Below are positions 5,904-64,000 of a DNA stretch of 64,000 bases, one piece after another. This stretch comes from Takakia lepidozioides (Eukaryota > Plantae > Bryophyta). A model generated the notes under the pieces. The model was given only the letters and a program-made list of their open reading frames with translations. It did no database searches and was not told the origin of the DNA. The DNA lies in the NCBI GenBank assembly GCA_030704615.1, contig CM060734.1, positions 6,944,001-7,008,000 on the forward strand, written 5' to 3'. Made by a program: the position numbers and the translations under genes. Position 1 is the first letter of the stretch, and every line of letters begins with the position of its first letter.

Positions 5904-6257
5904 TGATAAGAAAGCTAAGAACACACTGTTCACACAAGAAACAACATGAATCCAGCAGCATCACTCTTTAAAATAATAGTCGAGCAAGGGGCACCCCAAG
6001 CTATGGGGACTCCACCCCACAACAACCTATACTCCCTACATAAACACACTCAGATTCTAAAGCGTGAAGGAGCTCGGTCGCGCAGGCTCAACTCGAGAGA
6101 GATGAGCTGCGCGACTGATGCTCTCATGAAGATAAGACGGTTCAGATGTCAAACTAAACTTGACACCTGATTTAACACTTGACCTAAATCCAAGTGTTAA
6201 ATACAAATAACTAGCTTTATTCTAGTTAGTTTCACACTGTGCTTATTTAACTTGACA
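5904..6257 (-). repeat. Terminal repeat unit B (TG...CA), lone copy at the 5' end of Gypsy copy 1
   Basis: Minus strand TGTCAAGTTA...CTTATCA. Shares blocks (gcacccca..catgggga.tccac, ggctca.ctcgaga, gaagataa, ctagttagtttcacact, taacttgaca) with 10777-11093 and 20580-20906. Confidence 0.8.
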
Positions 6258-7009
6258 CCATTGATTCCGGTATGTGAGTATACTTTAAGAAATTGAATGG
6301 TTGGTTGAGTGAGATGGCTAAAGTGATGATTGCTGAGATAAGATTACGATCTGGGTAGTGATGGTGGGAGGATGGGCTGGCTATGTGGTTTCAGAGGAGA
6401 AAGAGCGAAGTTAAGCTGTATGTAATAATGTAGTATGGTGAGGGGAATGCATGTAGCTGGGAGAGGGCTTCGTAGATGGCCATAAGATGGTTGCGGGGCC
6501 CGGAAGTTGGTGGGTTGTACCAGTGTTAGTGGCCGCGTGGTAGACTCCATATCCGGCGCAGGAGCCAGCTTGGGAGCCATATGTGTAGTGTGCATGTGCT
6601 GAGGGGTATTTTAAAGAGGTAGGGCCTAGATGAATTGGAGGTGCTCCAACATGGGTGATATTGAGTGACGGGATGGGGCGGGGAGGGGTCGGAATCCATG
6701 TTTTGTTTGTTTTTGGTCTGTAGGGGGATCGAGATGGGGCGTGTAAAGGTGGCGTTGGAAAGGATGTGATAGCCATGCTGTGAGTGTCGGACAGTTTAAG
6801 GTGGGTAGAGAAGTCTACAGGTATATGGGTGTGGGAAACGTTGTGGACTAACAGGATTAAGGTTAGAGTGGGTTCTTTGTGCCGTAGGTATTTACGGAAA
6901 GGTGGGTTGCATATGTATCGAAGTTGTTTGGGTTCAATGGCTACCAAAGGAGTAACGTCAGGAGGGAATTGTAGAAGGGGGTGGTGATGGGCCAGGCATT
7001 TTTTATTGA

Positions 7010-7480
7010 GTTAGGATGAGGATGGTTGAGGTGGAAGGGGAGGAGTATGTAGCCTGGCGGGCCCATTGAAGGGCCTCGTGTGCAAGTGGCCCTGCGGGCG
7101 GGTGAGCGAGGCCTCCTCCTGTCCATGTGTGCTGGGTAGCGGTTCCTAAAGCACCGAATATACTGTCACGTGGATGTGGGTTGTTTTATGTGGAGAGCTC
7201 CATGGGGCAGGTTAGTGGGCTGGAGTAATATGAGTGAGTCAACTGAAATGAGGCGATGAGGAGTTTGAGGATGTCTGAGGGGAGGGTAGTATGGGAGTAG
7301 GCTTGCGCCAGTTTGTTGAGGTTACGGGGCTTCTTAGTGGGGGTATCGCCTAGGTATCGGTTAAGAAGCCAGCTGACCTCTGCGGCAAAGTCTTGTTTTG
7401 GAGGCTGTAGCTGGCTATTCTGTGTGTCAGAGGTGGAATATTTATACCAAAGCCAGGCAAGCCGAACATTGGGAATGGAT
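7010..7480 (-). other. PCIF1/CAPAM-like N6-adenosine methyltransferase-fold domain within LINE copy 1 ORF
   Basis: LAWLWYKY...FAAEVSWLLNRY...TLPSDILKLLIASFQLTHSYYSSPLTC...DSIFGALG...GGGLAHPPA...TILIL is colinear with PCIF1 as recalled (KLWLLY...VWCLLRRY...[27 protein letters not shown]...DGYFGSRG...FEANPPF...FIVFIP). One stop at 7186. Confidence 0.65.
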
Positions 7481-7754
7481 CTGGCAAAACTACCGTTCAT
7501 TGTGTAAATGTTGGATTGTGAGGTGCTGGGGCATCTTAATGGGTGGCCGGGCATAATATCTTTGTTTGGGTTGCATTCGGTGATGTATATTTGTATATTA
7601 GGAGTGGCTAGTGGTTGGCTGATGTAGCGGGTGTCAGTGGGTTGGGTTTGCGAGACATGATATTGGTGGGTGTGTCTTAGATAGGTGGTGTTTGTGGTTT
7701 TGTGGAATTTGATGAGGAGAGTGCGGTTATGAACTGGGTCGCAGTCGTCATGTG

Positions 7755-7905
7755 ATCCAAAGAGGCCGTCTTCAATTTGCCATGTGTTATCTTCTGCTGG
7801 GAATCCCTCCCATTTACACAAATAGTATGTATCAACACATATCGCTCCGAAGGCGTCAAGTGATGATTGGGTTTTGATGCCGAGGATAGCTTCAATGACG
7901 AAGGC
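7755..7905 (-). other. Chromodomain within LINE copy 1 ORF
   Basis: FVIEAIL...YYLCKWEGFPAEDNTWQIEDGL fits the chromo consensus (F/Y)xVExIL...YLxKWxG...NTWExxxxL. Confidence 0.85.
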
Positions 7906-10393
7906 CTCGGGGTGGTCTGGGTCTGGTAGGTGGGGGTACGGTGGTGGAGTGGGCGACAATTGGGATAAAAGGGATGATTGTTGGTGTGTGTTAGGTGATG
8001 TCGGTGACATCCAGGGAGGTGCGGTGAGGGGGGTGGGAAGGGGGGAGGGTTGGGGAGAGGGGGGGGATATAGACTGGGGGTTTTGAGATGCTTTAAGTAG
8101 TTGTAGTATTGATGGGGCTGGTGCTGTTCTGAATTCCGGGAGGAGGTCTTGGATATTGTGCGGGTAGAGCTTGCATGGCATATCACATTGTAAGGTGCAT
8201 GAGGCAGATGGGTGGCAAAAGAGGAGACGCAGATGGAGGAGGTAGCGGCGTGTCTTGATCGTGGCCCGTGAGTGTTTTAAGGTGAATTGACTTGAGGTTA
8301 GGAGCCGGTGTCCATCCGCAGTGGTGAGTTGGGCAAGGTTAGTGATATGTCGAGCTTTGAAGTAGGCAAGGATGTGTTTTTTTTGTTTAGGATATGAGTT
8401 TTCAAATTGTGCAGAAGAGGGGCTATTGTTCCATGCGCGTTCAAGTGGTGATATGGAGGTGGGATAGCCAGGAAGATCAGTTTGGATGCTTATTTTCCTT
8501 TGGCGTAGGAGAAAGAGGGTGCGGGCGGTGGGTGAGTGGAGGCAAGATTGGGGGTGGAGGGTGGGGAGGGAGTATAGCCCGTTGTGTTTGGAGGCAAGGT
8601 GCTTGAGTGGTCCTTGGAAAATGAGCCCTAGACGACCCGGGTCGTTGAGGGCTTCTAGGAGTTGTGTACCAAGTGTGCGGGCATATGAGATAATAAGGGG
8701 AGTGGATCCTATGCCATAATTGTCTTGGGGGAGTTGAGTGAGGACGCTGGGGGTACTGGTAGGTAATCCACATATACGTTTGGTGAGTTGGATAATATTT
8801 TTGTCCAGCTGTCTAATGTCAGGCAGGGAAAAGGGGGCTGCATGAAAGGCATATTGGATTTGTGGATGGAGGACTTGTCGGATGATAGCTAGTTTGGGAC
8901 GAATGGAAATGGGGGATTTGAGAAGGGCTAGGCTCTTGTTGTTTAGTTTAGAGAGAGTTATTTGCTTTTGGATGTTCCAGGTAAGCGATGGGACTAGTTG
9001 GATGCCTAGGTATGTGTAGGGTTCATCTGGACCTAAAAAAAGAAAATGTTTTTGTTGGTAACGGATGTGGAGCTTGCAGTGGGAGGCGATCGTAGATTTA
9101 GTGAATTTGCTATTATGTGTGGCTGTAGTGACCGCACATTTGTGAAGACTCGGTTTCGTGCTTGACCATTGGTTAAAGCGGGAGAGTTTATCGACCTGGC
9201 GGTTGAGATGTTGTGGCTTGTGTGCTAGGATAGCGAGGTCGTCTGCGAAGCGGCTGCGGATATTTCGTTAGTAGAGGTTTTGTATTGGTAGCCTAAGTTG
9301 CCTCGGGCGAGCTATCTTAGTAATGGTTCAAGGAAGATAATGAAGAGATAGGGGCTCAGCGTGTCCCCTTGGATGTTGCCGCGTAGGATGGGAATTGGGG
9401 GGGTGGAGCCATAGTAGGAACCAAAATATTCTGTGGTGTTGTTGGTGTAGATGTTACCGATGAGTTGGATGGCGTCGGTGGGGTAGCCTAGATCTGACAT
9501 GATGGCCAATAATCTAGGGTGGTCCAGAGAGCCGAAGGCATTTTTGAAGTCGATATAGAGGAGGTAGATGTCGTGTTTGGTAAGCTTAGCGTCTTCTAGG
9601 GCGGAGGTAACGAATTGTATCTGACGGATTGTGCTTCGTGTGGCCCGGAACCCTTCTTGGGGGTCGCTTAAAATCTGGTGTTGTTCTCCGTAATTAGACA
9701 ACATCCTTGTTGGGGTACTGGTGAATAATTTATAGATAGTGTTGGCGAGGGCTATTGGTCTGTAATTACTTAGATCTGTTGGGTCATCTTTTTTGAATAA
9801 TAGAATGGTTTGGCTATGTTTCCAGGAGAGTGGGAAACATTGAAGTAGATCGCAATGTTGAAAATTTTTAAAGATGAGAGAATGGAACTGGGGGTCAAGT
9901 GCTTGTAGGATGGCGTTGGGGATTAGACCTGGGCCCGGGGCTTTTGATTTAGAAAGAGCTTTTAGCATGAGTTGAATAGGTCCTGGGTAAAGAAGTTAAT
10001 GATGTGGTCTTCGGGTCGGCCTCGCTTTTCAAGTGAGAAGCCATCAAGATCGTGCCATGGGTAGTGTTTTACTTTACATAAACAGTTGTGATGGTGTAGG
10101 TTAGGGTGCAAGCAGTTATTGACCGTGGGTGTGTATGAGTCAGAAGCTTGTAGCCAGATTTCATGTCTAATATCCTCAGGGTGGGTTAACATATGTCCAC
10201 GTCTATGTTTGATGCAGTCGATAGGTGGGTTGATTGCGGGGTTGAAGATGGCTTTGTGAGCTCTTTTGGGGTGGTCGTGTAGTAGCTTTCCAAAGGAAAT
10301 GATGAATTTTTTGTGGTTTTCGGTGGCTTTATGCTTTGTGATGGCATATGCAGCGTTTTTGGCATCTCTTCCAATCTTGGAAAGAGATGCGGT

Positions 10394-11468
10394 TGTCGTG
10401 CGCATACATATCGCTACACAACTACATCGCTGTCCACAACCACACAATACATGTGCACACCAAACACTAGTCTATCACTAGTCCACCACTAGTGCACCAC
10501 TAGGCTGTCATTAGACAACCACTAGTCACCGCTAGTGTAGCCACTAGTCCACCACTAGGTTGTCACTAGCCACCACTAGTGCAGCCACTAGGCTGCCACT
10601 AGTCTACCACTAGGCTGCCACTAGCCACCACTAGGTTGTCACTAGCCACCACTAGTGCAGCCACTAGGCTGCCACTAGGCTGCCACTAGCCACCACTAGT
10701 GCAGCCACTAGTCCAACCACTAGGCTACCACTAGCCACCACTAGTCCATCACTAGGCCGTCACTAGTCCATCACAATGATAAGGAAAGAAATGATACAAG
10801 CATACAAACTCTCTCAAACTCGCACACTTGCACATGAAAACATCACTCATATATTAAGTCGAGCCAAGTGCACCCCACGCCATGGGGAATCCACACTACG
10901 GCGCCATAGCTAGACGCGGTGAGGCTCAGCTCGAGAAAGATAAGCCCACTGCGATCTGCCGTGAAGATAACAACGCCAGGTGCCCAAACATATATTGGCC
11001 CCTGGATTGATACTTGGGTCAATCCCAAATGTCAATATATCAAAACTAACTATTTCCTAGTTAGTTTCACACTAGTGGTAAAATAACTTGACAGCTGTCG
11101 TGCGCATACATATCGCTACACAACTACATCGTTGTCCACAACCACACAACACATGTGCACACCAAACACTAGTCTATCACTAGTGCACCACTAGGCTGTC
11201 ACTAGACAACCAATAGTCACCACTAGTGCAGCCACTAGTCCACCACTAGGCTGCCACTAGCCACCACTAGTGCAGCCACTAGTCCAACTACTAGGTTGCC
11301 ACTAGCCACCACTAGTGCAGCCACTAATCCACCACTAGGCTGCCACTAGCCATCACTAGTGCAGCCACTAGTCCAACCACTAGGTTGCCACTAGCCACCA
11401 CTAGTCCACCACTAGTCCATCACTAGGCTGCCACTAGCCACCACTAGTGCAGCCACTAGTCCATCACA
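10394..11468 (-). repeat. 3' terminal A-B-A repeat of Gypsy copy 2 (A 10394-10775, B 10777-11093, A 11096-11468)
   Basis: Two near-identical A units (TG...CA, filled with CCACTAG-type tandem repeats) flank B. The PPT-like AAGGGGGCGAT adjoins 11468 on the minus strand. Confidence 0.9.
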
Positions 11469-12102: not shown

Positions 12103-12970
12103 AAAGTCCATTTTTTTTTTTTTACCTCTTATAACAGGAAGGTAGACACCTTCATGACACACCAGATGGTGGTTTGAACCCACAACCACATCCAACGTGG
12201 TATGTGCCCATTACCACTGGGCTACATGCTGGTTGTCGAGGGTATTACTTTTATTTTGGGTATTTTTTAGTATCCTATAATTACATAATTTTATAATATG
12301 GTGAATTTTTGGCATGCTATTTTAATTATAATTTTTTGTTTCAAACAAATATTAGACACCCCATATTAATAATACAATAAAAGATTTTTTCTTACAAGAC
12401 AAATGAATTTATTATTTGGTTGAAATAAATTCATTTAAAGCATTCACATCATCAGCATTCAAAGTATAAACGTTTTGCGCTCTATCGAAAGTCATAGTGA
12501 CTGAACTAATAATTGAGTTTACATCTATTCACTTGTTGTCGGTATGATCATATTTGAATTTAAATTGTCCTCTAGATTTCGAGAAGTAGTTTAATAACAC
12601 CATAACTGGTGTGGTTGGTCTATTTAGGAGATCAATAGGCTGTCGCAATATTCCTCACCTTCTCATTTTTTGAATCCTACCTAACCACCATTTTACCAGT
12701 AAGCTACATACAAATATCTATATCATTCCCTTAAGAACATGTATATATTTTTGGAATTTTTCATAGGTATTATCTCAACCCTATAATAATTTTAATTTTT
12801 TTTAATGAATCATTATTTTAGACCCTATATTAATTTAGATTCCCTGATCACAATATAATGTACCATTTATTTTTTTTATTTTTTAAAAAAAAAATTATCT
12901 TTTCTGAATAAATTGCACCTTATATTTTTTTGCACGTCGGTTAGAAATTTTTGGAAGTGACTTCCCTGGG
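11986..12970. mobile_element. Non-autonomous TIR DNA transposon (MITE-like), 985 bp, AT-rich, inserted in gag
   Basis: 18-bp TIR CCC(G/A)GGGAAGTCACTTCC; TSD TCGCAGCT at 11978-11985 and 12971-12978 (8 bp, or 9 with the next C); gag is continuous once it is removed. Confidence 0.9.
12161..12233 (-). pseudogene. tRNA-derived sequence inside the MITE
   Basis: 73 nt; A-box TAGCCCAGTGG, B-box GGTTCAAACC, D stem GCCC/GGGC, T stem GTGG/CCAC, ends ACCAG/CTGGT; anticodon arm irregular. Confidence 0.55.
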
Positions 12971-14929
12971 TCGCAGCTCAGGATGCAAGTCATAACAATG
13001 GGCCTCCTCATGCCCATACTTGTTACAATGCCCACACTGTAGTTGTGTAGGCTGTGCCTGTGCCGACCCTTTGCCTCTCTCTAGGCAATCTCTCTTAACA
13101 TGTGGCCTTCCACAATCCCAACATGACACACCCGTCTATTGTTGACCTGAGAATGAAGGAAGAGACCTCTGCACCTGAGATCCTCTCTGACCTTCCTTGG
13201 GCTTCGTCTGAGCCCCCTTGTTGCCTTGAGCACGTTGGGGGGTTTGTTGTTGTTGGCTAGGAACCCCACTTCTTTGTGTCTCCTTGCCAAATCCCACCAT
13301 AACTACTCGCTCCTCCACCATGTTGAGCTCTATTCGCTCTGCTAGCAAAAACACATTTGCTAGGGTGGGTTGGGCCACTTGTAGGAGAGTTGCATCCCGC
13401 ACCATTCTCCTTAACTCATTGTCTAATATCCCATACCAGAATTGGACTGCCTGAGCTTCTGTAACCCCTTGGGTTACATTTATCAATCGTCTCATGCGCG
13501 TGTAAGCCTCACTCAAACTCTTGGTAGGCTTTCGTTGGAACTCTTGCAAGCTCCGCAACTTCTCTGTCCTTATCCCCTGGTAGTTTTTCCTCAACTCCCC
13601 GAAGAACTCCACAACTGGGTTAAAGGCAGGCACGGGTGCTGGTGCTGCAGCATGAGCTTGAGTGAATTTCCCAGCTCATGTACCACTTGTCCCACTACTA
13701 GTGCTTGCAGTTGGGGATGTTGGTATAGCTGCTGGTGTCGCCGTTGCTCTTGTGCCTCTGGTAATGGAGATATAGTCAGGTAATCAATACTCCTGCCATT
13801 CCTCAATCTTCACCTTATGTCCCCGCCTAAATTCATGGTAATCGTCCATGGGTGGCCCCTCGAGGTGCTGAAACAGCCCCTTCCACGTCATAAAAGGCGT
13901 AAACAGTTGTGGATTGCGCATCTGCTGCAAATCACACCAACTATCAAACTTATGTATGAAATCATCAAGCTCAATGGTGCCCACAGCTCCAGAGTACCGA
14001 CGTGGCCCCTTGGTAGCTCCATACATTTCCTCCATCGTGTCCCACAACAATGGCAAGGAAATAGCTTGCACCTGCGGCGTGGATCTCTCAGAGTCTGAAT
14101 CAGAACCTTCCTCATAAGACACTGAAGGTGAAGGTGGCCTACACTGCACACCTCGTCTTGTGTACCCACTAGTATTGCTGGTGTTCGTACCGGCACTCCC
14201 CTCAGCAACTGGTGGCACCTCCGTGATGAAAACTCACAACCCAACCGGTTGTCAACCTGTCTCTAATCCCCACTTTCCACAAGGTAACCGGGTAGAGAAT
14301 CTGTTGCGGCTGGTGGTTCAAGCAGGAATACTAGGTTTCTAACGTAGACCTGTACTTGCACCTGCATCCATCGCAAGAACTCATATGGTCTGCTGGTCAT
14401 CAACCCAGCCTCACCATAAGAGAAACAATGATGGTATAACTGCTCATCACCCTAGCCTCACCACTGACAGCACGTTATAGGATTGACCGGTGATCAAATC
14501 CGGACCAACCTCCTATGAAAACAAGCGCCCACACAAAACTAACATGGCGCACAGTCAAGCATGCAGGTGTGGAGGGGATCCAAACACAAGAAAATCAAGA
14601 TAGCAACTCCCCCACACCAAAAACACTCCACAATGTCGCTCCTGCAAGGACACCCAGCCCAACCTGGACTGACTCTTACCTCCACCTACGGAAAGGTTTT
14701 GGCCTACAGAGAAGGTGAAAGACTACAAGGGAGAGAGACTAAAGCAACTCCTAATCCCAGCATGCTCTCATCCCACTACCCTATCTCCACACTCTTTTGC
14801 TAGTCTCTCAAATAACTCTCTAGAAGCCCTCAATATGTCTCTCAAACAATCTCACTAAAGCTCCCAATCCTTGCACAATGGGACTCCAAAACAGTACACC
14901 AAGGCCCCAAGAGCCTGCCAAAACATAGC

Positions 14930-15742: not shown

Positions 15743-16700
15743 GATGAAGGCATTTGTCTTCTGGACTTGTTTGGCGGGATCAGCACCGGATTGGCTGCTG
15801 TGTTACAGGCAGGTGTATGAGTTCGGCGTTACCTGTATGTGGAGAGGGATGAGACTGCACGACGTGTTTCACTTTGCCATGTTGCTCAGTTGGTGCAGCA
15901 GTACCTTGAGTTGTTGCCGGTGTCTGCAATTCGTGGATATCATCAGGCCTTGCCAACAGACATTTCGTTGTTGGGGGCGCGGGATTTGGAGCGGGTTGGC
16001 TCCATTGATATGGTAGTGGCAGGTTGGCCCTGCCAAGGGCATTCATCAGCCAGGCATGGCAATGGATTGCGAGACTCGAGGTCGGGTCTGTTTTGGGAGA
16101 TGGTGCGGGTTTTGCGCAACTTGCAGCTTCATCAAGCTGTATCTCCAGCATACATCTTGGAGAATGTGCCACTGATGGGTGATTCTCGGGCCAGGGTGAT
16201 GGCCAGTGTGCATCAAGCCCAATCGTGGCTTGGGTCAGCAGTGTTGCTAGATGCAGCTGTAGTGGGTTCACGGGCTCATCGTCCCCGGCTATGGTGAACT
16301 AACTTAATGCCACTCGCACTGCTCAAGCGTGCATTTGATGGGGTGCAGCGACCAGCACACCTCACAGTGGATAGCATTTTGGACAAAGGGAGACAGTGTC
16401 AGCGTGTGAGACACGATGACCGTTCGCCTTTGGCAGTGGTCAACAAGGTGGGTCAACCACGAGTAGTACTACCTACACTGCTCAGCTACCCAGGATCGCA
16501 TGCTTTCCGAGATAGTGGATCTGGCCTCCTGTGGGATGTTCAGTTGCAACAGTTAGTGGAGCCTAATGCTGACGAGCGTGAGCGGGCAATGGGTTTTAGC
16601 ACTCGTATCACGGAGGTGCTGTCTCTTTCTGAGGCATCACGTCGTCAGGTGTTGGGGCAAGCAATGGATCTCAATTGCTTGACCTGGATTATCAGCTTGG
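15743..16700 (+). pseudogene. DNMT3-like C5 cytosine DNA methyltransferase domain in Gypsy pol
   Basis: Motif I LDLFGGISTG, II YVERD, IV VVAGWPCQGHS, V SGLFWEMVRVL, VI YILENV, VIII SRAHRPRLW*TN, IX ERERAMGF, X RRQVLGQAM; canonical order, intronless; stops at 15818 and 16295. Confidence 0.93.
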
Positions 16701-17158
16701 CTATGGCTGAACAACGCAGAGTGCGAAATACACTTCCCTCGCTGGTCTCTCTGCCTACCGAGACGGTACAGACAGTGAGTGGGGGCGAGCATGTGAGGAC
16801 CATGGGGTGTAGGCATCCATGGCACACGTGGGAGGTGCTCGAGGTTCAGAAGGAATTGGCAGCCAAGGTGGCGGTGATGGACGAGGTTGGGGATTTTTCT
16901 CGGGTTGAGGAAGTCCTCGAGGATGAGATGATGGGGCGGGATGAGGCCTTGTCATTGACTAAGCAGGTAGGGAGTACTCCTCAAGAGGTTGCAACATAGC
17001 AACCACTGGACGCGTCCTCTATCTCTAAGCCCACTAGACTTCAGGTTGCAGTTACGGAGGACAATTGGGAGCCTGACATCGGACCCATTGTCACCGGAGG
17101 AAAGAGACAACGTATACGGCGGTTCCTGAGGGCTTACAAGAATTGCTTTGCCTTCAGT

Positions 17159-18568
17159 TTGAAGGACTTGGGAACATTGAAGGGTCAAGAGATCTGTATT
17201 GAGTTGGCCACTGACACGCCAATCTTTCGGAGACCCTATAGATACAGTGACATGGAGAGGTATTTGATTCAGATGAGGACTCAAGATCTCTGGGAGGCAG
17301 GTTTGGTGGAGCTCTCTGGTGGAGGGTATGCTTCAGCCACAGTGATGCCAGCCAAGAAGGATGTTTATGGCAATTGGACGGAGAGACGTATGTGCGGTGA
17401 TTACCGGCCTGTAAATCATCAGACCAAGTCCGATAAGTATGCCATGCCAACATCAGAGGAGATCTTTGATGCCATCGGGCATGCTGAGGTCTTTAGCACT
17501 TTGGATTTATGATCTGGATATCACCAGTTGCCGATCAAGGAGGCGGACAAGCAGAAGACGACATTCTGGGGGATCAATGAGCACGGCAAGGATTGCCTAT
17601 ATCAGTGGCGGTTCTTACCATTTGGGCTTAAGAACGCTCCTGCAGAGTTTCAGAGAGTCATGGATAGGATTCTAGCAGGGGTGGACTTTGCTCGGTGCTA
17701 CATAGATGACATCATCATCTTTAGTGCTACGGTGGAGGAGCATGAGAGACACCTTCAGGTGCTATTGGAGCGCTTGAGAGCGCACAGATTGAAGTTGCAT
17801 CCGGGGAAGTGCAAGTTTTTCCACAACCAGATTGAGTATCTGGGTCACATGATATATCCTGGAGGATTGGGGGTACAGTAGACTAAGGTAGAGGCCATTG
17901 CATAAATTCCACGCCCCACGGATGTGAGCCGAGTTCGAGCTTTCATGGGGTTGACAAACTATTATAGACGGTTTGTCAAGGGATTTAGTGCCATTGCAAA
18001 GGCTCTAACCAAGCTGACCAAGGTGGACCAGGAGTGGCAGTAGGAAGATGAGCAGGAACGAGCTTTTCAAGAGCTCAAGACGAGGTTGACTTCGGCGCCT
18101 ATCCTGAGACGACCTATCAGGGGGCGTCATTTTCAGCTGCATACGGATTGGAGCATGCTGGGACTTGGAGCGGTGCTCACACAAGTGGATGATGAGGGGA
18201 GAGAGTTCGTAGTGGCTTATGCTAGCCGCTCGAACAACGCTGCAGAGGCTAAGTATAGCTCATATGAGGGAGAGTGCTTAGCTGCAGTGTGGGCCGTGGC
18301 ACACTTCAGGTGCTATCTATATGGCAATCTCTTCACCCTTGTCACGGATCACCAGCCACTCAAGTGGTTGATGAAGTCAGATAAGCTTATAGGGAAGCTT
18401 GCACGGTGGGCACTCATACTCCACGAGTATGACTTTCAGGTTGTTCATCGACTGGGTTTGGCCAATCGGGATGCGGATGGATTGAGTCGCAATCCATGCA
18501 CGAGCCAGCAGGATGACACTGGAGTTCGGTGGCATGGTGAGACGGACGAGGAGATGGTGCCGCGATGA
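17159..18568 (+). pseudogene. pol: Gypsy reverse transcriptase and RNase H (in-frame stops)
   Basis: RMCGDYRPVN, LDL*SGYHQ, PFGLKNAPAEFQR, YIDDIIIF, EYLGH; HTDWS, EGECLA, TDHQPL. Confidence 0.95.
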
Positions 18569-18841
18569 CACACATCTGCATTTTTGTGTATCTTGGAATC
18601 GGGAGGTCAGGTTGGACCCACAACAGGGATGATTGTAGACGGAGTGTCTGAGGACCCTAAGGCTAGTGATGAGCCAGATGGTACCAGAGATATACATGAG
18701 GATTTGGCTGTGTTGGACTACCTCTTTACTGGAGACACGGCAGCCACTGTGACTGCCAAGGAGATGGATCGGATCCTGCAACGAGCCAAGAGGTTCAAGT
18801 GGGAGGGGATACACCTGCTCCGAGTATAGGAGGATGGTCGG

Positions 18842-20134
18842 GTGAGGATTGTACCTCACCCCACACAGCGTGCACGGTTAGTGCGGCATGCCCATGAGGA
18901 ATTGGGGCATTTTGGAGTGCGACACACTCACAGTTTACTGCAGGGGCAGTATTGGTGGCGTGATATACATACAGAGGTACAACAGTTCGTGGCTAGGTGC
19001 ATGGTGTGTGACAGGGTGTGTGCTTCATTCAATGCCCCTACACCACAGTTGTATCATTTACCAATCATGGGATTGGGCTACAGGTGGAATCTTGACTTTG
19101 CAGGACCGTTGCCACTGACTATGCGCCAGCACAGATATGTGTTGGTGATGGTGGAGCACTTCTCCAAGTGGATTGAGTTGGTTCCATTGCCTGACAAGAC
19201 TAGTGAGGGGGTTGCGTATGCATTCTTGGATCGTGTGCTTAGCCGATTCGGTGCTCCAGCTGAGGTACTCACGGACCAAGGGAGAGAGTTCTTGGGGGAG
19301 TTTCAGGCTTTGTGTGATAAAGCATTGATAGACTACCGCACCACTTCTCGGGATCATCCTGAGGCCGATGGCTTGACAAAGAGAGTTGTTCAAACGGTGA
19401 AGAGGGGTTTGCGCAAGTATGGCTTGCAAAAGGGAGACCTAGGAGATTGGGATCTTCAGGTGCCTTGGTTAGCCATGGGCTACAGGTTCAGCAAACAAGT
19501 ATCATTTGCCTCCTTCTCACCATATTTCCTTCTCTTTGGCCGAGAGCCGGATTTGCCTGCAGCCATTCGTAGGGACACTGCTCAAGTCCTTAACCTTGAC
19601 GATCCGGACGTGTGGGTACGTGCATGTGATGAGCGTGCAGAGTTGTTCAAGAAAGTCATGCCCATGGCTTTTGAGAACCTTGCCATTGCACAGTACCGTG
19701 ATACGTTGAGGTATGCCACTATACGTGGTGGAGGATATCGTCCTGGGGTTCGGCGGTTTAGCCCGGGTGACTATGTTTATTTGCAGCAGACTGCTCCTAC
19801 GACCCTGGATGTCACTGCAGGGCGTGTTATTCTGAGGGTTCGAGAGGTGTTGCCCTCAGGACTCATGATCTTGGAGGGTCGAGATGGCATGACTTGGAAA
19901 GACCATGTGCGTAATTGTGCGCCATGTCACCTTCCCAATGTCAATGGCAGAGTTGACCCAAACTTGGCAGTGGTACCTGCAGGTTTGAGGTGCATGCTCT
20001 GTGGGTCTGTCAAAGGGGCAGCCACCATGCTGGTGTGTAATCGATGCTCAAGAGGTTGGCATATGGGATGTTTGACACCACCTCTTGAGAGGGTTCCTGA
20101 TGGAGATTGGTTATGTCCACACTGCTTGGGATAA
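18842..20134 (+). CDS. Integrase with C-terminal PHD finger (PHD about 19990-20128)
   Basis: HHCC zinc domain, DDE core, then the C4HC3 pattern CMLC...VCNRC...WHMGC...WLCPHC. Confidence 0.92.
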   Translation: MRIVPHPTQRARLVRHAHEELGHFGVRHTHSLLQGQYWWRDIHTEVQQFVARCMVCDRVCASFNAPTPQLYHLPIMGLGYRWNLDFAGPLPLTMRQHRYVLVMVEHFSKWIELVPLPDKTSEGVAYAFLDRVLSRFGAPAEVLTDQGREFLGEFQALCDKALIDYRTTSRDHPEADGLTKRVVQTVKRGLRKYGLQKGDLGDWDLQVPWLAMGYRFSKQVSFASFSPYFLLFGREPDLPAAIRRDTAQVLNLDDPDVWVRACDERAELFKKVMPMAFENLAIAQYRDTLRYATIRGGGYRPGVRRFSPGDYVYLQQTAPTTLDVTAGRVILRVREVLPSGLMILEGRDGMTWKDHVRNCAPCHLPNVNGRVDPNLAVVPAGLRCMLCGSVKGAATMLVCNRCSRGWHMGCLTPPLERVPDGDWLCPHCLG

Positions 20135-22195: not shown

Positions 22196-22780
22196 GTAGG
22201 GTATAAAAGAGGCAATTTTAAAATTCTTACCGGCGGTCCTCAGAGGCGAGCACGGCCTAAATTGCATTCCCTAGCGGGGCGGGCGGCTTGGGGCCGGGAG
22301 AGGGCGAGGTGGGGCGAGGGGGTGGGGCACGCGCACGGGGCTCGCGCGTGCGAAAGAAGGACGCATTACCGTAGATTTTTTTTATATTATTTTTTTCATA
22401 GACAATGTCACTGAACACTGAACCCTGCAGGCTGCTACCCCATTTTGTTTTCTTGCCTGTGTTCATCTACATGCTGTTTTCTCACTGTTCGGTCCTTTCT
22501 CCTCTCCTACCATATACTCATCTGGTCGAGAAATCCGTCTGCTGCCTCCCCTCGCGTCGGAAGCTTACTTGTAAGCCATGCTGTGATACACATACTGTGG
22601 TACCCATCTTCTCTTAAGTGGGTTTTGTTTCCTTGTACTTTGCTACTGCTGGGTCCCTTTCCCCTCAGTGGTCAGCGGTCCGTCCGGCTGCCTTCCCTGA
22701 CAGCGGAGGCTTTCTCTTTCCAGCATTTGGTGATACCTAGACGCACTGCCGTGCTCAGTTGGAAGGACTTGGGCGAAGAT

Positions 22781-25700
22781 ATGTTGGACAAGAAGCCTGT
22801 GCTTTTTGGGCAAGTTAGGAGTCACCCCACTGTTGTGTCGTTGCCGAATACGTATGCATCGAAACACATGAACCGGCCCGGGCCAGAGCTTGACGAAGAT
22901 CCGGAGGAAAGAGTTCTTCTGGAGCTTCTGGCAGCTTTCCCAGGGTTCTCTCTACAAGTCATTGCCTCTGCTTATACAGAAGCCGACTGTGATCCAAATG
23001 GAGCTGCGGAAATCCTTACCACACAGCATTCTACAAGTGGACAAGGAGATTGGGAGAGTCAGTTCACGCAATTGAACAGGACGCCGAACGGTTATATAAG
23101 AGACACAGGCGGGAGTAATTATAATGTGAACACAGTTGGAAGGGGTGGTCAATCTGCGGATCTGCTTTTGCAGAAATATGGTAGTGGAGTAAGTGACCGT
23201 GTCGCAAGAGATTCCCAGGGAGAAAACGCTTTTCAAATGCCTTTGTTACAGGAGACACTCAGGGCACCTGATCAAAACGCCGTGGCTTATCCGCATTTAT
23301 ATGCTGGTTATGGGTCACAGCACTTATTCCATAATCAAGTAAACCCTAGCAAACGTCCTCCACCTACAATCAGCTCTGAGAAAGGAAGCACATATGAAAT
23401 TCTTGAAACTGGGAAGTTCCTAAGCGGACCAGCTGGGATTGAATCAAGCACTTCTAATCTGCTCAAGGAAAATGCATGGACGCCATCACCTCAAGATGTC
23501 GTGAGGCACACTGGTGACATTTACACTCGTACTCTGTCGGATGCTTCTCACAGCAAAGTCTCAGCCGTGTCGGGTACAGTTTCAAATATGATTGGGAGAA
23601 GTGGCCGTGCTGACCGCCTCCATGAGAGCAAGGGGACAAGAACAGTTGACAACGACAGCGGCCGATATACAATTGAAGGGCAGGTTGAAGGAGTCAAAGG
23701 GAGTTCCTTGCAGGCGGGGAGGAACAAGAAGAAGAAAAAGAAGGGTGAAGGCCTTGATTTCGAAGAATTGGAGCCTAAAGATGCTGCACAGCGTAGGGCA
23801 GTGGAGGATTTCCTGTACTCAATGCTTGGCGATGGTTTTCAGCTTGGCATCTATGTCGTTAGGGACGTTTTGCGTACGTACAGTTGCTTTCTCCTTCCCT
23901 TACCATCTGGTTGCCATTTCTGAGTAGTTTCTGTTTAATGGCCACTCTTCATTTTCAATGACTAGCCAGTCTCTTGTGTGCCATGGCTTCAGTCTACTCT
24001 GGGTAGTTGGTACCTCTTTTTGTTGTACCCCTAGGGAAGAAGTTATAGTTGGGGGAGTTCTAGAACAGGTTTAGATCACAGTCAAGTAAGATGACATTGG
24101 TGCCTTGTTTCTCAGGTGATTGTCAAGGTGACACACAAAAGGTATGTGGTGTCTTGCATTTTTTGCTTCTCAGTGTCTTCCAAGTGATGCGCAGTATTGA
24201 GCAGCTGTTGGACACAGTAGCTTTAGCTTACTTTTTTCCTGTTGTTTTTAGGTGTGGCAACTGAACTCGATGCTGTCTTGGTCTTATGAAGTGAAGTTGA
24301 ACAAGTGCAGTTGGTCGCGGAAGTGGAGGTTTACAATACTAGGTTTAGCAAGTCTGAGAATTTGTGATGGGTGACATAATTCTGTAGAGGTTGAGCCAGT
24401 TCAAGTGCAGGTTTGTTCACAGTGAAGGACACTTTGTGAAGTAAGCCTTGAAAATGAAGTGAGTGTCCTATTGATTGCAAAGCAGGGTCTGACGGAAACT
24501 GAACACTTTTTTCTCTCATCATTTCTCCCTTGGTTGCGTTTTAGCATTTTATGATGGGATCTTCTGAGCAGGCCATGGGATTGGGTGTACTACCCAGGAA
24601 GCCTGTGGGTTGTCACCCCACAAGTGTCCTGACTAATCTCAGTGGTGATTGCAGGGAACTACCAGCAGCCAGTGTTCCAGCACTTGACCTTAAATCAAGT
24701 CCTATGGGTGTATTGTGCATTTTTTAATAGGTTCATGATCTCAACTCATATTGCTCCCCCATGGAATGATTTTAAATTGATGGGAAATGGGATTGCAGAG
24801 TCTTGATGCACTGCTGCAAATGGCTTCATCTTCTTCAGGATTCAGCAATGAGAATGACAATGCATGCAATGGGAAAGCATCTCTAATTGGTGACAACAAA
24901 CTGGCTGAGCGGGTAGATCCATTGCAAGCCCTGATTGAGGCCTTTCCAGACATTGACCCTGCACAAGTGGTTATGGCTTTCCAGGTAATTGCAGACATGG
25001 GTTCATGCATTGCTGTGTCCTGTAACAGCTTTGATGTTTCAAATCAGAACTGATAATGGTGAGTATATTACCTTGGGATGATGGTACGATGGGTCTATGC
25101 AGCTGTAAAGTGAGTAGATACTGGAAGTTCTTTTATTCTCATCCCTGGCTATCAGATTTCTTGGTTCACCTGTGATCATGTTGCAACAGGGTTGTTTATC
25201 CTTCTTCCACAGTGTTGTTAAGAATTGACCTGTAGTAAGATGGGATAAGAGCAGGTGCATTGGGTCCATAATGCGTTCTATATTTGAACTTGTGACTTCG
25301 CTCCCTATATTTTTGTTGTTAGGAGCATGAGGGAAATGTGGAGCTGGTTTCAAATGCACTGATCAAGACTGGTATGAGGGTAAGCACAATTAGAAAATAT
25401 ATATTTCAAGTATTTGTAACTTCATAGGCTTGGAAGAAAGTAGTTGGGGAGAGAATAGGCTAAATGCAGGTTATTGCCATGCAGATTCTGCTTGATCGGC
25501 TGAAGGGAACCTTTCCATCTGTTGACAATACCACCTTGTTTGAAGTCCTGCAATCCAACAACTTCTCCTACAGGTATCTCCTCCTGATGTTGTTTACATC
25601 CTTTCCTTTTATTGAGTCTTTGGTCAGAATCTTCTTCGCAGGTTGAATCTGCAATGGACATTTCAGCTTGGGGTTAGATGAAATTTGCTCCCTCTCACTC

Positions 25701-40685: not shown

Positions 40686-40880
40686 TATGGCTGTCAGGTC
40701 ATTCAGAAGGCATTGGAGGTGGCAGATGTGGATCAATAGACACGGGTTTCAGAGCTGGATGGACATGTCATGCGTTATGTTCAAGGCCAAAATGGAAACC
40801 ATCTGATCCAGAAATGCATTGATTGTGTATCCCCGGACATAATCCATTTTATAATTTCTTCCTGCGTCTATGGGCAGGTT
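40686..40880 (+). pseudogene. Pumilio (PUF) repeat fragment
   Basis: YGCQVIQKALEV...[26 protein letters not shown] versus [39 protein letters not shown]; contains a stop. Confidence 0.85.
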
Positions 40881-41315
40881 ATCCACTACAGGGGTTACCA
40901 CACTCACAGCTACACTCGGTCCGGCTTCCATATTTCCTACTTCCGCCTCATGCTTGATTCGTAACTGGCATTCATGTTTCCAGTGTCCCTCTTTCTTGCA
41001 GTAGTGGCATCTCGTGATTTCTTTGTTTCTGGGTTGATGTTCTCTATCATGTGGTGGATAGTCATCTCGTGGCCTCTGATAACGATTACCCATATTGTAT
41101 CGTCTTGGTCCATCCGATCCTCCCTGTCGGATTTGGATTTGGTGTACCCCCACCTCTCGTGTGTACCCACTCTTCTTGGCCCGTTGATTGTATATACAAT
41201 GGCTGGTATTATGATTGTTCATATGACAAATATCACAGTATTTGTCTTTCACGTGGCATTCCGTTGCCAAGTGCCCTGCAGTCCCACATTTGTAGCTCTC
41301 CATCTGCCCTCTCAA
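40881..41315 (-). pseudogene. gag fragment with three zinc knuckles
   Basis: YKCGTAGHLATEC, CDICHMNNHNTSHC, CHYCKKEGHWKHEC. Confidence 0.75.
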
Positions 41316-41323
41316 CTACTCCA

Positions 41324-43282
41324 AGAGAGAGAGAGAGAGAGAAGACTCCGGCCAAAGCCGGCGTAACTAAGAGCCACTTCGCCTTACGGCTACTGCCCCC
41401 TTTCGGGGGTGGGCCCTATAAAGAGAACAAGTGTCCAGGGGAGGTAGTAAATATGGTAGCGGTGCCTAGGATACCCGGGGATGCCGCAGAGGGGTTGGAC
41501 TCGAGGTGTCGCTTATTGGTGAAGATGGCAGTGAGGGAGCGGAGCGCTGTGAGGTGGAGGGCTTTAAAGCATTTGTGGATCGAGGGGATAGGGATTTGAA
41601 GATTGTCGTGTAGCGCGTTTATACTGGCGATATGAATCCCACCTCTAGTACTAGCTGTGATAATTGATAGGGGGCCGGTGCGCCACCCACGCTGGCAGAT
41701 GGCGAGGAGGAGGGAGGCATATTTTTGTCGTTTCTCTAGGGTGGAGGGGGCTGGGTAGCGGTCATTACAGTATGTGAATTCAACGAAGTGAATGGTTAAT
41801 TCTGGGGAAGGGGAATTGGGTAGGGGGGCATTGATGGGTAAGCCTTGGACAAGTAGGATATCCGGGCAGAGCCGAGAGGGACAGGTACAGGGTGAGTGAT
41901 GACAAATACATGGAAGTATCCAGTGAGGGGCAGTGTGGTCAGGGGGTCGGCCTTGGTAGGTACCAGCATTGATGAGTGAGAACCATCTGTTTTATGATCT
42001 GGACATGAGAAGTTTATGGATGTGCCAAACTGCGTGATTATGGCGGTGATGCGGAGACCATGTATAACGGGGTGAATACACTGACTAAGGAGGTGGGGCC
42101 GGGTGTCACGTACTGTATGTGTATGTGAGCATAACGGGCAGTTGGGGGATGGGAATAGGCGTGGCCAAAAGATGTGCTTGCGTTGGTGTCCCATGTATTG
42201 GGCGTAACGAAATTTGAGCGTTTGTTGGATTTGCTCGTCGGTGACAGTCTTGGTGTGCCATAAGTAGTTTGACAATTTGTGGTGAAGAACTGTAGATTGT
42301 GTCCATTTTTGGATATGGGCTTTGGTATGGCTGATAGAGGCTGAGGCTTGTTTATGTGCTTCGCGTGTGAGAGTGGATTTTAGGTTACGTATGGGTAGTA
42401 GGGGGTCCTGGTACTGGGTGAATTAGCCAGAATGGGTGAGTGTGAGCAATATGGATGGGGTCGGCCGTGGGATCCAATGGGGGTTGGGCGGCCCCTGCCT
42501 GGGCGAGGAGGTCTGCGTTTTCGTTACCGGTGATACCAGTGTGGGAGCGAACTTTGAGAAAGTGTATGGGGGTGATTAATGGAAGCCGCACGGTTAATGA
42601 TAGCTGCAATGAGGTTCCGGTCTGGGTGGTGGAGGTGGCAGGAGGGGCTGGAGAGGTGGTTGCAGAGAAGAAATAGTGAGGTAAGGCTGTCTGTGAAAAT
42701 GTAGTATGGGGGGAGAAGGAGAGTGCTTCAAAGATTGCCATAAGCTCAACGCATAATATAGTGGCTGGGCCTGGAAGTCTAAGAGCTACCCCACGATTAT
42801 TAGCAGCGTGAAAAACACCGTAGCCAGCGTTAGAGCCGGATTGGGAGCCATCTGTATAGTGGGAGTGTGAGGGAGAAAATTTGAGCGGCAGACGTAGATG
42901 TGAGACCGGTGGGTCAGTAGGGGGTGGGAGAGGGGCAGGAGGAGGGCGCGGTAGCGCCCTTATCCAGGCCTTGCTTGGGTTGACTCTGGGAAATAGGGTG
43001 GGTAAAGAGCAAGATGTAGAGGGAAGATGATGTGTGTTGGGGGTAATGGAGACTTTCATCCCCCATGTGCATACGAGTCAGTAGTGTAAGGTAGAGGGGA
43101 GGGTAATGGGCGTGGAGGTGGGATGGGTGTGTTGGATAAGTAGAAGTGACGTAGTGGTGGATTCTAAGCGTCGGAGGTATTTAGGGGAGGGGAGGTTGTG
43201 TTTGTATAGTAGCTAGTTTGGTTCAAAGGTGGCTAGAAGGGTGACGCCATGGGGGAGTTGAAGAAGGGGGTGGGGGTTGTCT
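41324..43282 (-). mobile_element. LINE copy 2, 3' part: RNase H, CCHC, restriction-like endonuclease, structured 3' UTR, (CT)n tail
   Basis: HYTDGS...KVRSHTGITGNENAD; CPLC..H...C; RHN; PDILL...FVEFTY...KRQKY (PD-(D/E)xK-type RLE). Confidence 0.9.
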
Positions 43283-61517: not shown

Positions 61518-64000
61518 TCTAGAGGCCTTTGCTGTGTAAGTAGGAGAATAGTACAGGCAGAGGGGGAGGAGTGGGCAGCAGTACGAGCCCATTGGAGGGC
61601 TTCTTGTATTTGGGAGTCAGGAGGATGAGCAAAGCCGCGACCGGACCACCTGTGTTGGGTGGCAAGACATGTGGCGCCAAAGATTATGGTGTGGGCTGGC
61701 ATATGAGGTAAGTTCCATGGGGCACGTGAGTGGGCTAGAGTAGTAGGAGTGAGTAAGTTGGAAGGAGGAGATTAAGAGGCTAGACAGTTCTCTGGGGATA
61801 GTACTGTGAGTGTGTGCTTGTATTAGTTTGGATTGGACGCGGGGTTTTTTGGAGGGGATGTCCTTAAGGTATCGGTCCAATAGCCAGCAGATTTCAGTAG
61901 CGAAATCCTGTCTGGGTGGCAGTATCTGATATGCCTGTGGGTTAGGAGTAGAGTATTTATGCCAGAGCCACGCTAGCCAATCATTGGGGATGAGGCCAAT
62001 GTATCGGCCGCTGTGGGCGTAGATTTTTGACCGTTGAGGGCCCTGACAGATTAAGGGGGAGTCGTGGGAAATGTCTTTATCAGGGTTACGTTCGATAGTG
62101 TTGATGTGAATGTGAGGAATGGCGAGCGGGTAGGGAATGTTGTGGGCATCTGTGAGTTGTGCCTGGGAGACATGTTGCTGGTGAGTGTGTGTCAGGTAGT
62201 TAATGTTGGTACGTTTATGGAACGCAGTAAGGAGGGCGAGGTTGTGGATGGGGTCACAGTCGTCATGTGAACCAAAGAGGTCGTCCTCAATTTGCCAAGT
62301 GTTGTCATCTGAGGAAAAACCGGCCCATTTGCATAGGTAGTACGTATCCAGACATGTAGCGCCAAACGCGTCAGTTGATGTCTGGGTTCTGACCCCGAGA
62401 ATGTCTTCAATAATAAAGGCGGTGGAATTGTTAGGATCGGCACCAAAAGTAGGAGAACACGGCGGGGGGGAGGGGGGGATTATGTCTACCTCGGTGCTGT
62501 AAGAAGTAGCGGAGAGGGTGGGGGAGGTTTGAGTGTGCGAGTGAAGGGGTGGTGGGCTGGCAAGGTCATGACTACGGGTCTGGGTATGCGGTGAGGAGTA
62601 GGAGGGGGAGGGGGCTGTGGCGCAGGGGAGAGTGTCAATGGTACCAGTATCCTCGGCATGAGAGGATTTAAGCATTTGTAGGATAGAGGGGGCAGGGGCG
62701 GTACGAAAAGCGGGGAGTAGATCCTGCGGACTGTGGGGGAAAAGAAGACAGGGTAGGTCGCATTCAAGGGTACATGAGGCCGATGGGTGGCAAAATAGGG
62801 TACGGAGGTGGTTAAGGAATCTGCAGGTTTTGGGAGTGGCTCTGGAGTGTTTAAGGGTGAATTCTATGAGGGTCAAGAGGCAGTTGCCGGTGGCGGTGGT
62901 GAGCTTGGTGAGGGTCGTGATGTGTCGTCCTCTGAAATATTTGATGATAAGTATCTTTTGGCGGGGGAACTTGCGTTCGAATTGGGAGAGGAAAGGGCTC
63001 GTATGCCAGGCCTGTTCGAGGGGAGATATGGATTTAGGATAATCAGGGAGATCGGTTTGCACACTCGTTTTCATCTGGCGGAGTATGAATAGGGAGCGGG
63101 CAGTAGGGGAATGGAGACAAGACTGTGAGTGGAGGAAAGGTAGTGAGTGAAGTCCATTATACTTGGAGGCCAGGTGTTTGAGTAGCCCGCAGTAGATGAG
63201 ACCTAGACGGCCCGGGTCGTTGAGGGCTTCGAGTAGTTGGGAGCCAAGAGTGCGCGAGTATGATATTATTAAGAGACTAGTACCGATGCCATAGCTGTCC
63301 GTGGGGAGTTGAGTGAAAGCATTGGGAGTGCTAGTTGGGAGACCACAAATGCGCTTAGTGAGTTGGATAATTTGTCTGTCGATCTGGGTGATGTCAGGGA
63401 GGGAGAAGGGAGCCGCATCGAAGGAGTATTGGACCTGTGGTCTTAGGACGGATTCTATGAGGGAGAGTTTGGGCCTGATGGCTATGGGGGCTTTGAGGAG
63501 AGCCAGGCTTTTATTAGTTAGTTTGGTGAGTGTGGCGATTTTTTGTACATGCCATGTGAGCGAGGGGACAAGTTGAATACCTAAGTATGTGTAGGGTTCA
63601 TCAAGGCCTAGGAAGGGAAATGGTTTGTTCTGGTATTGGATGTATAGTTTGCAGTGTGACGCAATAGAAGATTTGGTAAGCTTACTGCGGTGGGTAGCCG
63701 CGGTGATGGGCGCATTTATGAAGACTTAGTTCCATTCCAGACCATTGGTTAAAGCGTGATAGTTTTTCAACTTGCCGGTTGAGGTGTTGGGGTTTGTGCG
63801 CAAGGATGGCAAGGTCATCCGCGTAAGCGGCAGCATAAATTTTGTTTGAGGAAGTTTTGTATTGGTATCCAAGTTTGCCACGTGCGATCCATCTGAGCAA
63901 GGGTTCAAGGAAGATGATAAAGAGGTAAGGACTAAGGGGGTCGCCTTGGATAGTGCCGCGTAGAATCGGGATGGGAGGGGTGGAACCATAATATGAGCTT
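61518..64000 (-). mobile_element. LINE copy 2, middle part: RT C-term, chromodomain (about 62270-62420), PCIF1-like domain (about 61535-62000); continues off the right edge
   Basis: QGDPLSPYLF, YADDL, YTYLG; FIIEDIL..YYLCKWAGFSSDDNTWQIEDDL; FATEICWLLDRY..YYSSPLTC..IFGA..GFAHPPD. Confidence 0.9.

What the first reader, a model, noticed from the sequence alone, without database searches (positions are those of the whole stretch)
7010..7905. LINE carrying a chromodomain plus a PCIF1/CAPAM-like m6A methyltransferase-fold domain between RT and RNase H
Seen in both diverged copies (also 61535-62420): a clear chromodomain, then about 150 aa colinear with the PCIF1 catalytic region as I recall it (WLLxRY, LPxxI..L...F, YSSPLTC for FASPLNC, IFGA for YFGS, AHPP for ANPP). 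Known: PCIF1 makes cap-adjacent m6Am through an NPPF motif. Here the motif reads HPPA/HPPD in both copies, so the domain may be inactive or changed in specificity. Inference: a chromatin reader plus an RNA-cap or adenine-handling module in an RNase H + RLE LINE. I do not know of this architecture being described.
Basis: partly seen in the sequence, partly recalled or inferred. Interest (0 to 1): 0.9.

Follow-up and report, generated by a model that had tools for sequence, protein, structure and literature searches.

The report
Dualen LINE carrying PCIF1-derived pseudo-methyltransferase
This jumping gene from a plant-lineage genome carries a histone-mark reader and a domain related to the enzyme that methylates mRNA caps (PCIF1); that second domain is shared across Dualen-like retrotransposons, looks disabled here and possibly active in some relatives, and I found no paper describing it.

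Summary
Observation confirmed and extended. Two decayed copies of one LINE (A, B) encode RT, a chromodomain and a PCIF1/CAPAM-like domain. RNase H follows in A, and a third fragment supplies RNase H and RLE. The chromodomain passes Pfam's cutoff and keeps its aromatic cage. The second domain is a real PCIF1 homologue: the family profile hits CAPAM crystal structures (E 4e-8), and a model of an intact relative matches CAPAM (Foldseek 2e-11; Z 17.7, next 7.7). Both domains are under purifying selection. The domain is not special to this genome: 506 protein clusters match it, including full-length Dualen/RandI-type polyproteins (APE-RT-PHD-PCIF1-like-RNase H-RLE). This family lacks the catalytic aromatic residue, the WW domain, most of the helical domain and apparently the cap-stacking Trp. 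A dead, RNA-binding pseudo-enzyme is therefore likelier than a cap methyltransferase. A few relatives keep NPEY plus that Trp and may be active. The precedent is the inactive PCIF1-clade domain of DIRS elements. I found no description in LINEs, but could not read Repbase or the founding Dualen paper. This scan already holds 27 similar first-reader notes, those shown from this genome.

The parts
9243..9995 (-). Copy A reverse transcriptase core (stop at ~9313, frameshift near 9250-9270)
   Evidence: Pfam RVT_1 1e-17; 66% identical to the RT of an APE-bearing relative in L004; 47% to full-length P0118
8090..9267 (-). Copy A end of RT, thumb and C-terminal helical region
   Evidence: 73% identical to copy B, pN/pS 0.25
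7910..8089 (-). Copy A Pro/Ser-rich linker
   Evidence: 33% identical to B, pN/pS 0.78, close to neutral
7750..7905 (-). Copy A chromodomain with all three cage aromatics (F in AFVIEAIL; W and F in CKWEGF)
   Evidence: Pfam Chromo above cutoff; model pLDDT >90 over most of this part; all 50 Foldseek rows are chromodomains, E only 0.006-0.07; pN/pS 0.21
7290..7650 (-). Copy A ECNP..DI beta hairpin and helices; the helices and adjoining strands align to the end of the CAPAM helical domain
   Evidence: Most conserved block of the plant-type clade; model residues from 40 align to 6IRX from residue 422; pN/pS 0.37
6840..7289 (-). Copy A PCIF1/CAPAM-like Rossmann core: motif I YYSSPLTC, FG, motif IV HPPA; stop at 7188-7186, frameshift near 6991
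   Evidence: breaks look private to this copy
6300..6620 (-). Copy A RNase H, decayed and cut at its C-terminal end
   Evidence: tblastn with relative P0013, E 4e-11; 43% to the copy C region
62650..64000 (-). Copy B RT end and thumb (runs off the window)
62260..62420 (-). Copy B chromodomain, cage complete (AFIIEDIL, CKWAGF)
   Evidence: Pfam Chromo 4e-7
61535..62150 (-). Copy B PCIF1-like domain; frameshift near 61690; motif IV HPPD; truncated after strand 5
41420..43272 (-). Copy C, 3' fragment of a related element: last strands of the PCIF1-like domain, RNase H (42861-42490), CCHC finger, RLE (PD 41868, E 41784, KxxKY 41733)
   Evidence: Pfam RNase_H 4e-9; tblastn to P0013 RNase H-RLE 8e-85

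Best explanation
These are decayed copies of a multi-copy Dualen/RandI-type LINE family of a streptophyte (plant-lineage) host. SHOWN: the polyprotein runs RT - chromodomain - PCIF1-like domain - RNase H - CCHC - RLE when the three copies are taken together; a close relative has APE upstream; both accessory domains are kept by selection; the PCIF1-like domain is shared across Dualen-like elements. INFERRED: the domain came from a cellular PCIF1/CAPAM early in Dualen history, keeping the Rossmann core and the end of the helical domain but not the WW domain. In this lineage it has lost methyl transfer (motif IV HPPA/HPPD has no aromatic residue to stack the adenine) and acts as a nucleic-acid-binding pseudo-enzyme. 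It most likely holds the element's own RNA in the ribonucleoprotein or at the RNA/DNA hybrid next to RNase H. INFERRED: the chromodomain binds methyl-lysine histone tails (H3K9me most likely) and draws insertion toward silent, repeat-rich chromatin, as chromovirus integrase chromodomains do; a PHD finger fills the same slot in some other Dualen-like elements.
For: Fold and closest relative: profile to CAPAM 6IRX/6IRV E 4e-8/1e-6, colinear over all motifs; 48 of 62 members hit PCIF1_WW; model pLDDT 85.7; Foldseek 2e-11; Z 17.7 against 7.7 next; Atlas TM 0.67 PCIF1 against 0.44 Dam. Selection: pN/pS 0.21-0.37 in these domains against 0.78 in the linker. Spread: 506 clusters; full-length P0118 and P0159. 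Catalysis likely lost: only 10 of 68 aligned rows fit [DNSH]-P-x-[YFW]; the aromatic is needed for base stacking (PMC4738411); NPPF mutants inactivate CAPAM (PMC8287941). Precedent: the DIRS1 PCIF1-clade domain is judged inactive and proposed to bind template RNA. Chromodomain targeting precedent: PMC12477314.
Against: No binding or activity data. No RNA run holds this stretch, so expression is not shown. His is an allowed first residue of the motif, and H (69%) and P (82%) are conserved, which could mean a retained enzyme role. Many database rows are decayed copies, so motif counts understate what active elements carry. In most plant-type relatives the chromodomain cage is degenerate, so histone reading may not be essential. 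The repeat-rich neighbourhood fits heterochromatin targeting but also mere survival there. The folded model is of a relative (P0004); the window's own piece folded poorly in its MTase half.
Confidence: 0.5

Rival explanations
1. The domain is an active N6-adenine methyltransferase in this family too, marking the element's own RNA or new cDNA. His replaces Asn, and the stacking aromatic comes from another loop.
For: [DNSH] is allowed at position 1; the motif I region and the FG motif are strongly conserved (F 96%, G 88%); HPPY occurs in 5 rows; four relatives keep NPEY with P-x-W, three of them shown beside RT and/or RNase H; other retrotransposons carry cytosine MTases kept by selection (PMC5890265).
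Against: Position 4 is A or D in the window and mostly N/D/T/H in the clade. An NPPF string in copy A near 6910 lies in the loop after strand 6 and is absent from copy C and relatives, so it is a chance match.
Confidence: 0.15
2. The domain is a cap reader or a decoy of host PCIF1: it binds the m7G cap of the element's transcript to select full-length templates or shield them.
For: PCIF1 is by far the nearest structure, and the match extends into the end of the helical domain; the NPEY relatives keep a Trp at the W588 position, three of four also an acidic residue right after the motif.
Against: In CAPAM the cap sits between the helical and MTase domains and contacts R235, E558 and W588. The window family lacks most of the helical domain, has no Glu at the E558 position and shows no P-x-W after strand 5 (both copies are broken close to this point). 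There is no WW domain for Pol II mimicry.
Confidence: 0.17
3. The domain binds SAM/SAH or serves only as a rigid scaffold between RT and RNase H, with no nucleic-acid contact.
For: The cofactor-side motifs are the best conserved part; selection is a little weaker than on the RT end (0.37 against 0.25, intervals overlap).
Against: The conserved H-P at the adenine site would be unexplained; many LINE clades work without such a spacer (own knowledge).
Confidence: 0.13
4. The domain is a vestige with no current role.
For: All three window copies are broken; motif IV is variable across the family.
Against: pN/pS well under 1 with synonymous sites near saturation; kept in frame across deeply split lineages.
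Confidence: 0.05

Closest known systems
Dualen/RandI LINEs (Kojima and Fujiwara 2005; described in PMC5029228, PMC4640811, PMC9977147)
   Same: RT similarity; RNase H, CCHC finger and RLE at the end; APE in a close relative (L004, RT 66% identical); full-length relatives also show a Josephin-like protease motif (P0159, by eye).
   Different: The domain lists I could read (SET, C48 peptidase, APE, RT, RNase H, CCHC, RLE) name no PCIF1-like domain and no chromodomain. APE and protease are not in the window's truncated copies.
PCIF1/CAPAM cap-specific m6Am methyltransferase (PDB 6IRV-6IS0)
   Same: Rossmann core, motif order and the end of the helical domain; best match by profile, Foldseek, VIA-align and Atlas.
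   Different: No WW domain; most of the helical domain absent; NPPF replaced by HPPA/HPPD; E558 and apparently W588 equivalents missing in this family; fused inside a LINE polyprotein.
MTase domain of DIRS1-type retrotransposons (PMC4738411)
   Same: A PCIF1-clade domain inside a retrotransposon polyprotein, probably inactive, proposed to bind template RNA.
   Different: Different order of element (tyrosine recombinase, not target-primed). From my own knowledge the DIRS domain follows RNase H, whereas here it precedes it. An Atlas cluster with RT_RNaseH members, possibly DIRS, scores lower (TM 0.52) than PCIF1 (0.67), which hints at a separate capture; not tested by a tree.
Chromoviruses (Ty3/Gypsy with an integrase chromodomain)
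   Same: A chromodomain with the aromatic cage in a retrotransposon protein, known there to steer insertion to H3K9me chromatin (PMC12477314).
   Different: Here it is in a non-LTR element, between RT and the MTase-like domain; there is no integrase.
DNMT-carrying retrotransposons, including SymbioLINE-Dnmt (PMC5890265)
   Same: A methyltransferase fold carried by a LINE and kept by selection.
   Different: Those are C5-cytosine MTases in ORF1; this is an N6-adenine, PCIF1-type fold inside the RT polyprotein.

Membership tests
Dualen/RandI LINE | C-terminal CCHC finger and restriction-like endonuclease | tested here: met
   Copy C: CPLCS..H..C, PD..E..KxxKY; tblastn to P0013 E 8e-85. Lost by truncation in A and B.
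Dualen/RandI LINE | APE endonuclease upstream of RT in the same element | tested here: inconclusive
   No APE in the window, where copy A is cut at 10393 and B runs off the edge. APE is present in the L004 element with a 66% identical RT, and in P0118 and P0159.
Dualen/RandI LINE | RNase H between RT and RLE | tested here: met
   Pfam RNase_H in copy C; decayed in copy A.
Dualen/RandI LINE | N-terminal cysteine protease | tested here: inconclusive
   5' part absent from the window; a Josephin-like motif seen by eye in P0159, no Pfam hit.
Dualen/RandI LINE | RT groups with named Dualen references in a tree | not testable with these tools
   No Repbase sequences or outgroup at hand. The unrooted RT tree separates the plant-type rows from the rest with bootstrap 100.
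PCIF1/CAPAM fold family | CAPAM-type Rossmann MTase core, by profile and structure | tested here: met
   (structure from intact relative P0004, 43-59% identical to the window pieces).
PCIF1/CAPAM enzyme | Catalytic NPPF or [DNSH]PP[YFW] motif | tested here: not met
   HPPA and HPPD in the window; canonical-like in 10 of 68 relatives.
PCIF1/CAPAM enzyme | WW domain and full helical domain forming the cap pocket | tested here: not met
   The match starts at zebrafish residue 422; no WW hit.
PCIF1/CAPAM enzyme | Cap-dependent m6Am activity | not testable with these tools
   Needs an assay.
Canonical methyl-lysine-binding chromodomain | Chromo fold with three cage aromatics | tested here: met
   cage positions read by eye against HP1-type sequences.
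Canonical methyl-lysine-binding chromodomain | Binding to H3K9me or H3K27me peptides | not testable with these tools
   Needs a peptide pull-down.

The most novel reading that the evidence does not exclude
An ancestral Dualen LINE captured cellular PCIF1. Some present-day Dualen-like elements (the NPEY + P-x-W type) still encode a working cap or adenine N6-methyltransferase that marks their own RNA, while others, including this chromodomain-bearing plant family, kept it as a reader. This would be the first mRNA-cap-modifying enzyme encoded by a LINE, coupled to a swappable histone reader.
Probability: 0.25. Interest if true: 0.88.

Novelty: new variant of a known kind. Interest (0 to 1): 0.66.

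Why it matters
Dualen sits at the switch from RLE to APE in LINE evolution, and active copies are known in Chlamydomonas (PMC9977147). A conserved PCIF1-derived domain in the middle of its polyprotein adds an apparently unannotated part to that clade. It also makes testable a question left open for DIRS elements: what a retrotransposon does with a PCIF1-type fold. Natural NPEY and HPPx versions give a ready pair for comparing an active-looking and a dead-looking form. A chromodomain or PHD finger in the same slot suggests chromatin-guided insertion by a non-LTR element, which is much less studied than in Gypsy elements.

Tried and rejected
Single-sequence searches of the window piece or P0140 against PDB sequences did not find CAPAM, nor did a 6-row profile; only the 62-row profile did. 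WD40 hits come from summing many weak repeat matches and were dismissed. The Atlas feature search gave only unnamed clusters. 'Dam-like' was rejected as the nearest family. The NPPF string near 6910 was rejected as the catalytic motif (wrong place in the fold, not conserved). An opposite-strand or alternative-frame reading was not needed: Pfam, selection and relatives all support the minus-strand frame. Host identity was not determined; the nearest named hit of a host-like ORF (22415-23920) is a moss protein at 42% over a fifth of its length. No RNA run holds the stretch. Kojima and Fujiwara 2005, a Kojima review and Boulias 2019 are not held, and Repbase could not be checked. Ten paper searches found no PCIF1-like domain in LINEs. 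The domain tree is only the quick one, has no PCIF1 or DIRS rows and no root, and left out rows under 200 aa. Database searches used the pieces either side of each break, by reference; for the two trees the pieces were joined with X in scripts.

Full report
What is in the window. Three pieces of one LINE group lie on the minus strand. Copy A (about 10393 to 6258) has RT (Pfam 1e-17), a 693-codon stretch ending in a stop at 7188-7186, a further 59 codons in the same frame, a frameshift near 6991, and a decayed RNase H. Copy B (window end to about 61535) has a 702-codon stretch, 63% identical to A, a frameshift near 61690 and a truncation. Copy C (43272-41420) holds the last strands of the domain in question, RNase H (4e-9), a CCHC finger and an RLE. 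Contigs of four public runs, three of them labelled as one organism, show many diverged copies along all of A. They read a sense codon at A's stop, and many lack the extra base at the frameshift, so these breaks look private to this copy.

Chromodomain. It passes the Pfam cutoff in both copies, aligns with HP1/CBX-type chromodomains and folds with high confidence from the window's own sequence. The 50 Foldseek rows are all chromodomains, though with weak E-values. All three cage aromatics are present in A and B. The plant-type relatives keep the fold, but most have a degenerate cage. P0004 keeps the two cage residues its sequence covers.

The PCIF1-like domain. The window piece alone scores faintly (PCIF1_WW E 0.058). 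Two metagenomic relatives have the same domain in frame with RNase H and score better. A profile search found 506 clusters at E under 0.001. Of 62 aligned members, 48 hit PCIF1_WW, the best at 3e-18. Their profile hits zebrafish and human CAPAM at 4e-8 and 1e-6, with all motifs colinear. A model of the intact relative P0004 (pLDDT 85.7) matches CAPAM at Foldseek E 2e-11, while the next family scores 4e-3. It gives Z 17.7 over 230 residues, next 7.7, and Atlas TM 0.67 against 0.44 for Dam.

Selection. Between A and B, pN/pS is 0.21 for the chromodomain, 0.37 for the subdomain before the core, 0.37 for the N-half of the core and about 0.27 for the motif IV piece. It is 0.25 for the RT end and 0.78 for the linker. 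Synonymous sites are near saturation, so the ratios are rough, and decay after insertion would push them upward.

How widespread. Full-length relatives P0118 (3459 aa) and P0159 (3467 aa) read APE, RT, PHD, PCIF1-like, RNase H, CCHC, RLE; P0159 also has a Josephin-like motif by eye. Two endonucleases in one element define Dualen/RandI (PMC5029228). An element in L004 with APE has an RT 66% identical to copy A. The domain tree puts the window in a well-supported YYSSPLTC clade, apart from an RFASPL(N/D) group that holds the PHD forms; the RT tree splits the same way. The hosts of these metagenomic rows are unknown.

Is it active? N6-MTases need [DNSH]PP[YFW], with the aromatic residue stacking the base (PMC4738411). 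CAPAM binds the cap between its helical and MTase domains, with R235, E558 and W588. The window has HPPA and HPPD, no WW domain, only the end of the helical domain, and no P-x-W after strand 5. Across relatives the first two motif positions are mostly H and P, while the fourth is rarely aromatic (10 of 68 canonical-like). Four relatives keep NPEY and P-x-W, three of them shown next to RT and/or RNase H. They are mixed with H-type rows in the tree, which suggests repeated change from an active-like ancestor; without a root the direction is not shown.

Mechanism. Most likely (0.5) this family's domain is a dead enzyme that binds nucleic acid, probably the element's own RNA next to RNase H, while the chromodomain reads methylated histones and biases insertion. 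Rivals are a cap reader (0.17), an active enzyme (0.15), a cofactor-binding scaffold (0.13) and a vestige (0.05). The fold, position, spread and selection are shown; every functional step is inference.

Novelty. A PCIF1-clade domain in DIRS retrotransposons is known, with the same inactive-binder idea. I found no description in LINEs in ten searches, and the Dualen domain lists I could read omit it. The founding paper and Repbase were out of reach, and Pfam already marks many of these proteins, so an annotation may exist. Other first readers left 27 notes holding the same words, the eight shown all from this genome; those notes are unchecked and were not counted as support. Verdict: a new variant of a known kind, interest 0.66.

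Noticed in passing
window 15821-20131 (+): Ty3/Gypsy pol with a C5 cytosine methyltransferase (Pfam 5e-13) before RT, and a PHD finger after the integrase; like the KnitGypsy-Dnmt3 elements of PMC5890265.
   Followed up: partly
window ~6126-6257, 10394-10763 and 10960-11467: Copy A is bracketed by high-copy repeats whose two parts are joined directly at ~11095 and in many contigs (joint 6257 to 10394). With the gag-like copies at 1007-2764 and 12965-14708, this looks like the split direct repeats of a DIRS/PAT-type element inserted twice into the LINE.
   Followed up: partly
P0071 (L012), P0105 (L013), P0115, P0125 (L011): Dualen-like elements whose PCIF1-like domain keeps NPEY and P-x-W: the best candidates for an active enzyme.
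   Followed up: partly
P0118 ~2410-2545; P0159 ~2240-2395: The PHD finger seems flanked by, or inserted into, chromo-like strands (V-x-W motifs), so a chromo-like fold may be ancestral in this slot; seen by eye only.
   Followed up: no
L004 11220-11915 and 6499-10706 (-): A Dualen-like element with a short upstream ORF before APE-RT, ending where a chromodomain would begin, tail to tail with another Dualen-like element.
   Followed up: partly
window 44151-45359 (-): DUF4216 domain, typical of CACTA transposases.
   Followed up: no
window 22415-23920 (+): Long exon-like ORF with an At5g58720 UBA-like domain, probably a host Smr-domain gene; nearest named hit is Ceratodon purpureus at 42%.
   Followed up: partly
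window 40752-41315 (-): Gag with two zinc knuckles directly after the 3' end of copy C.
   Followed up: no
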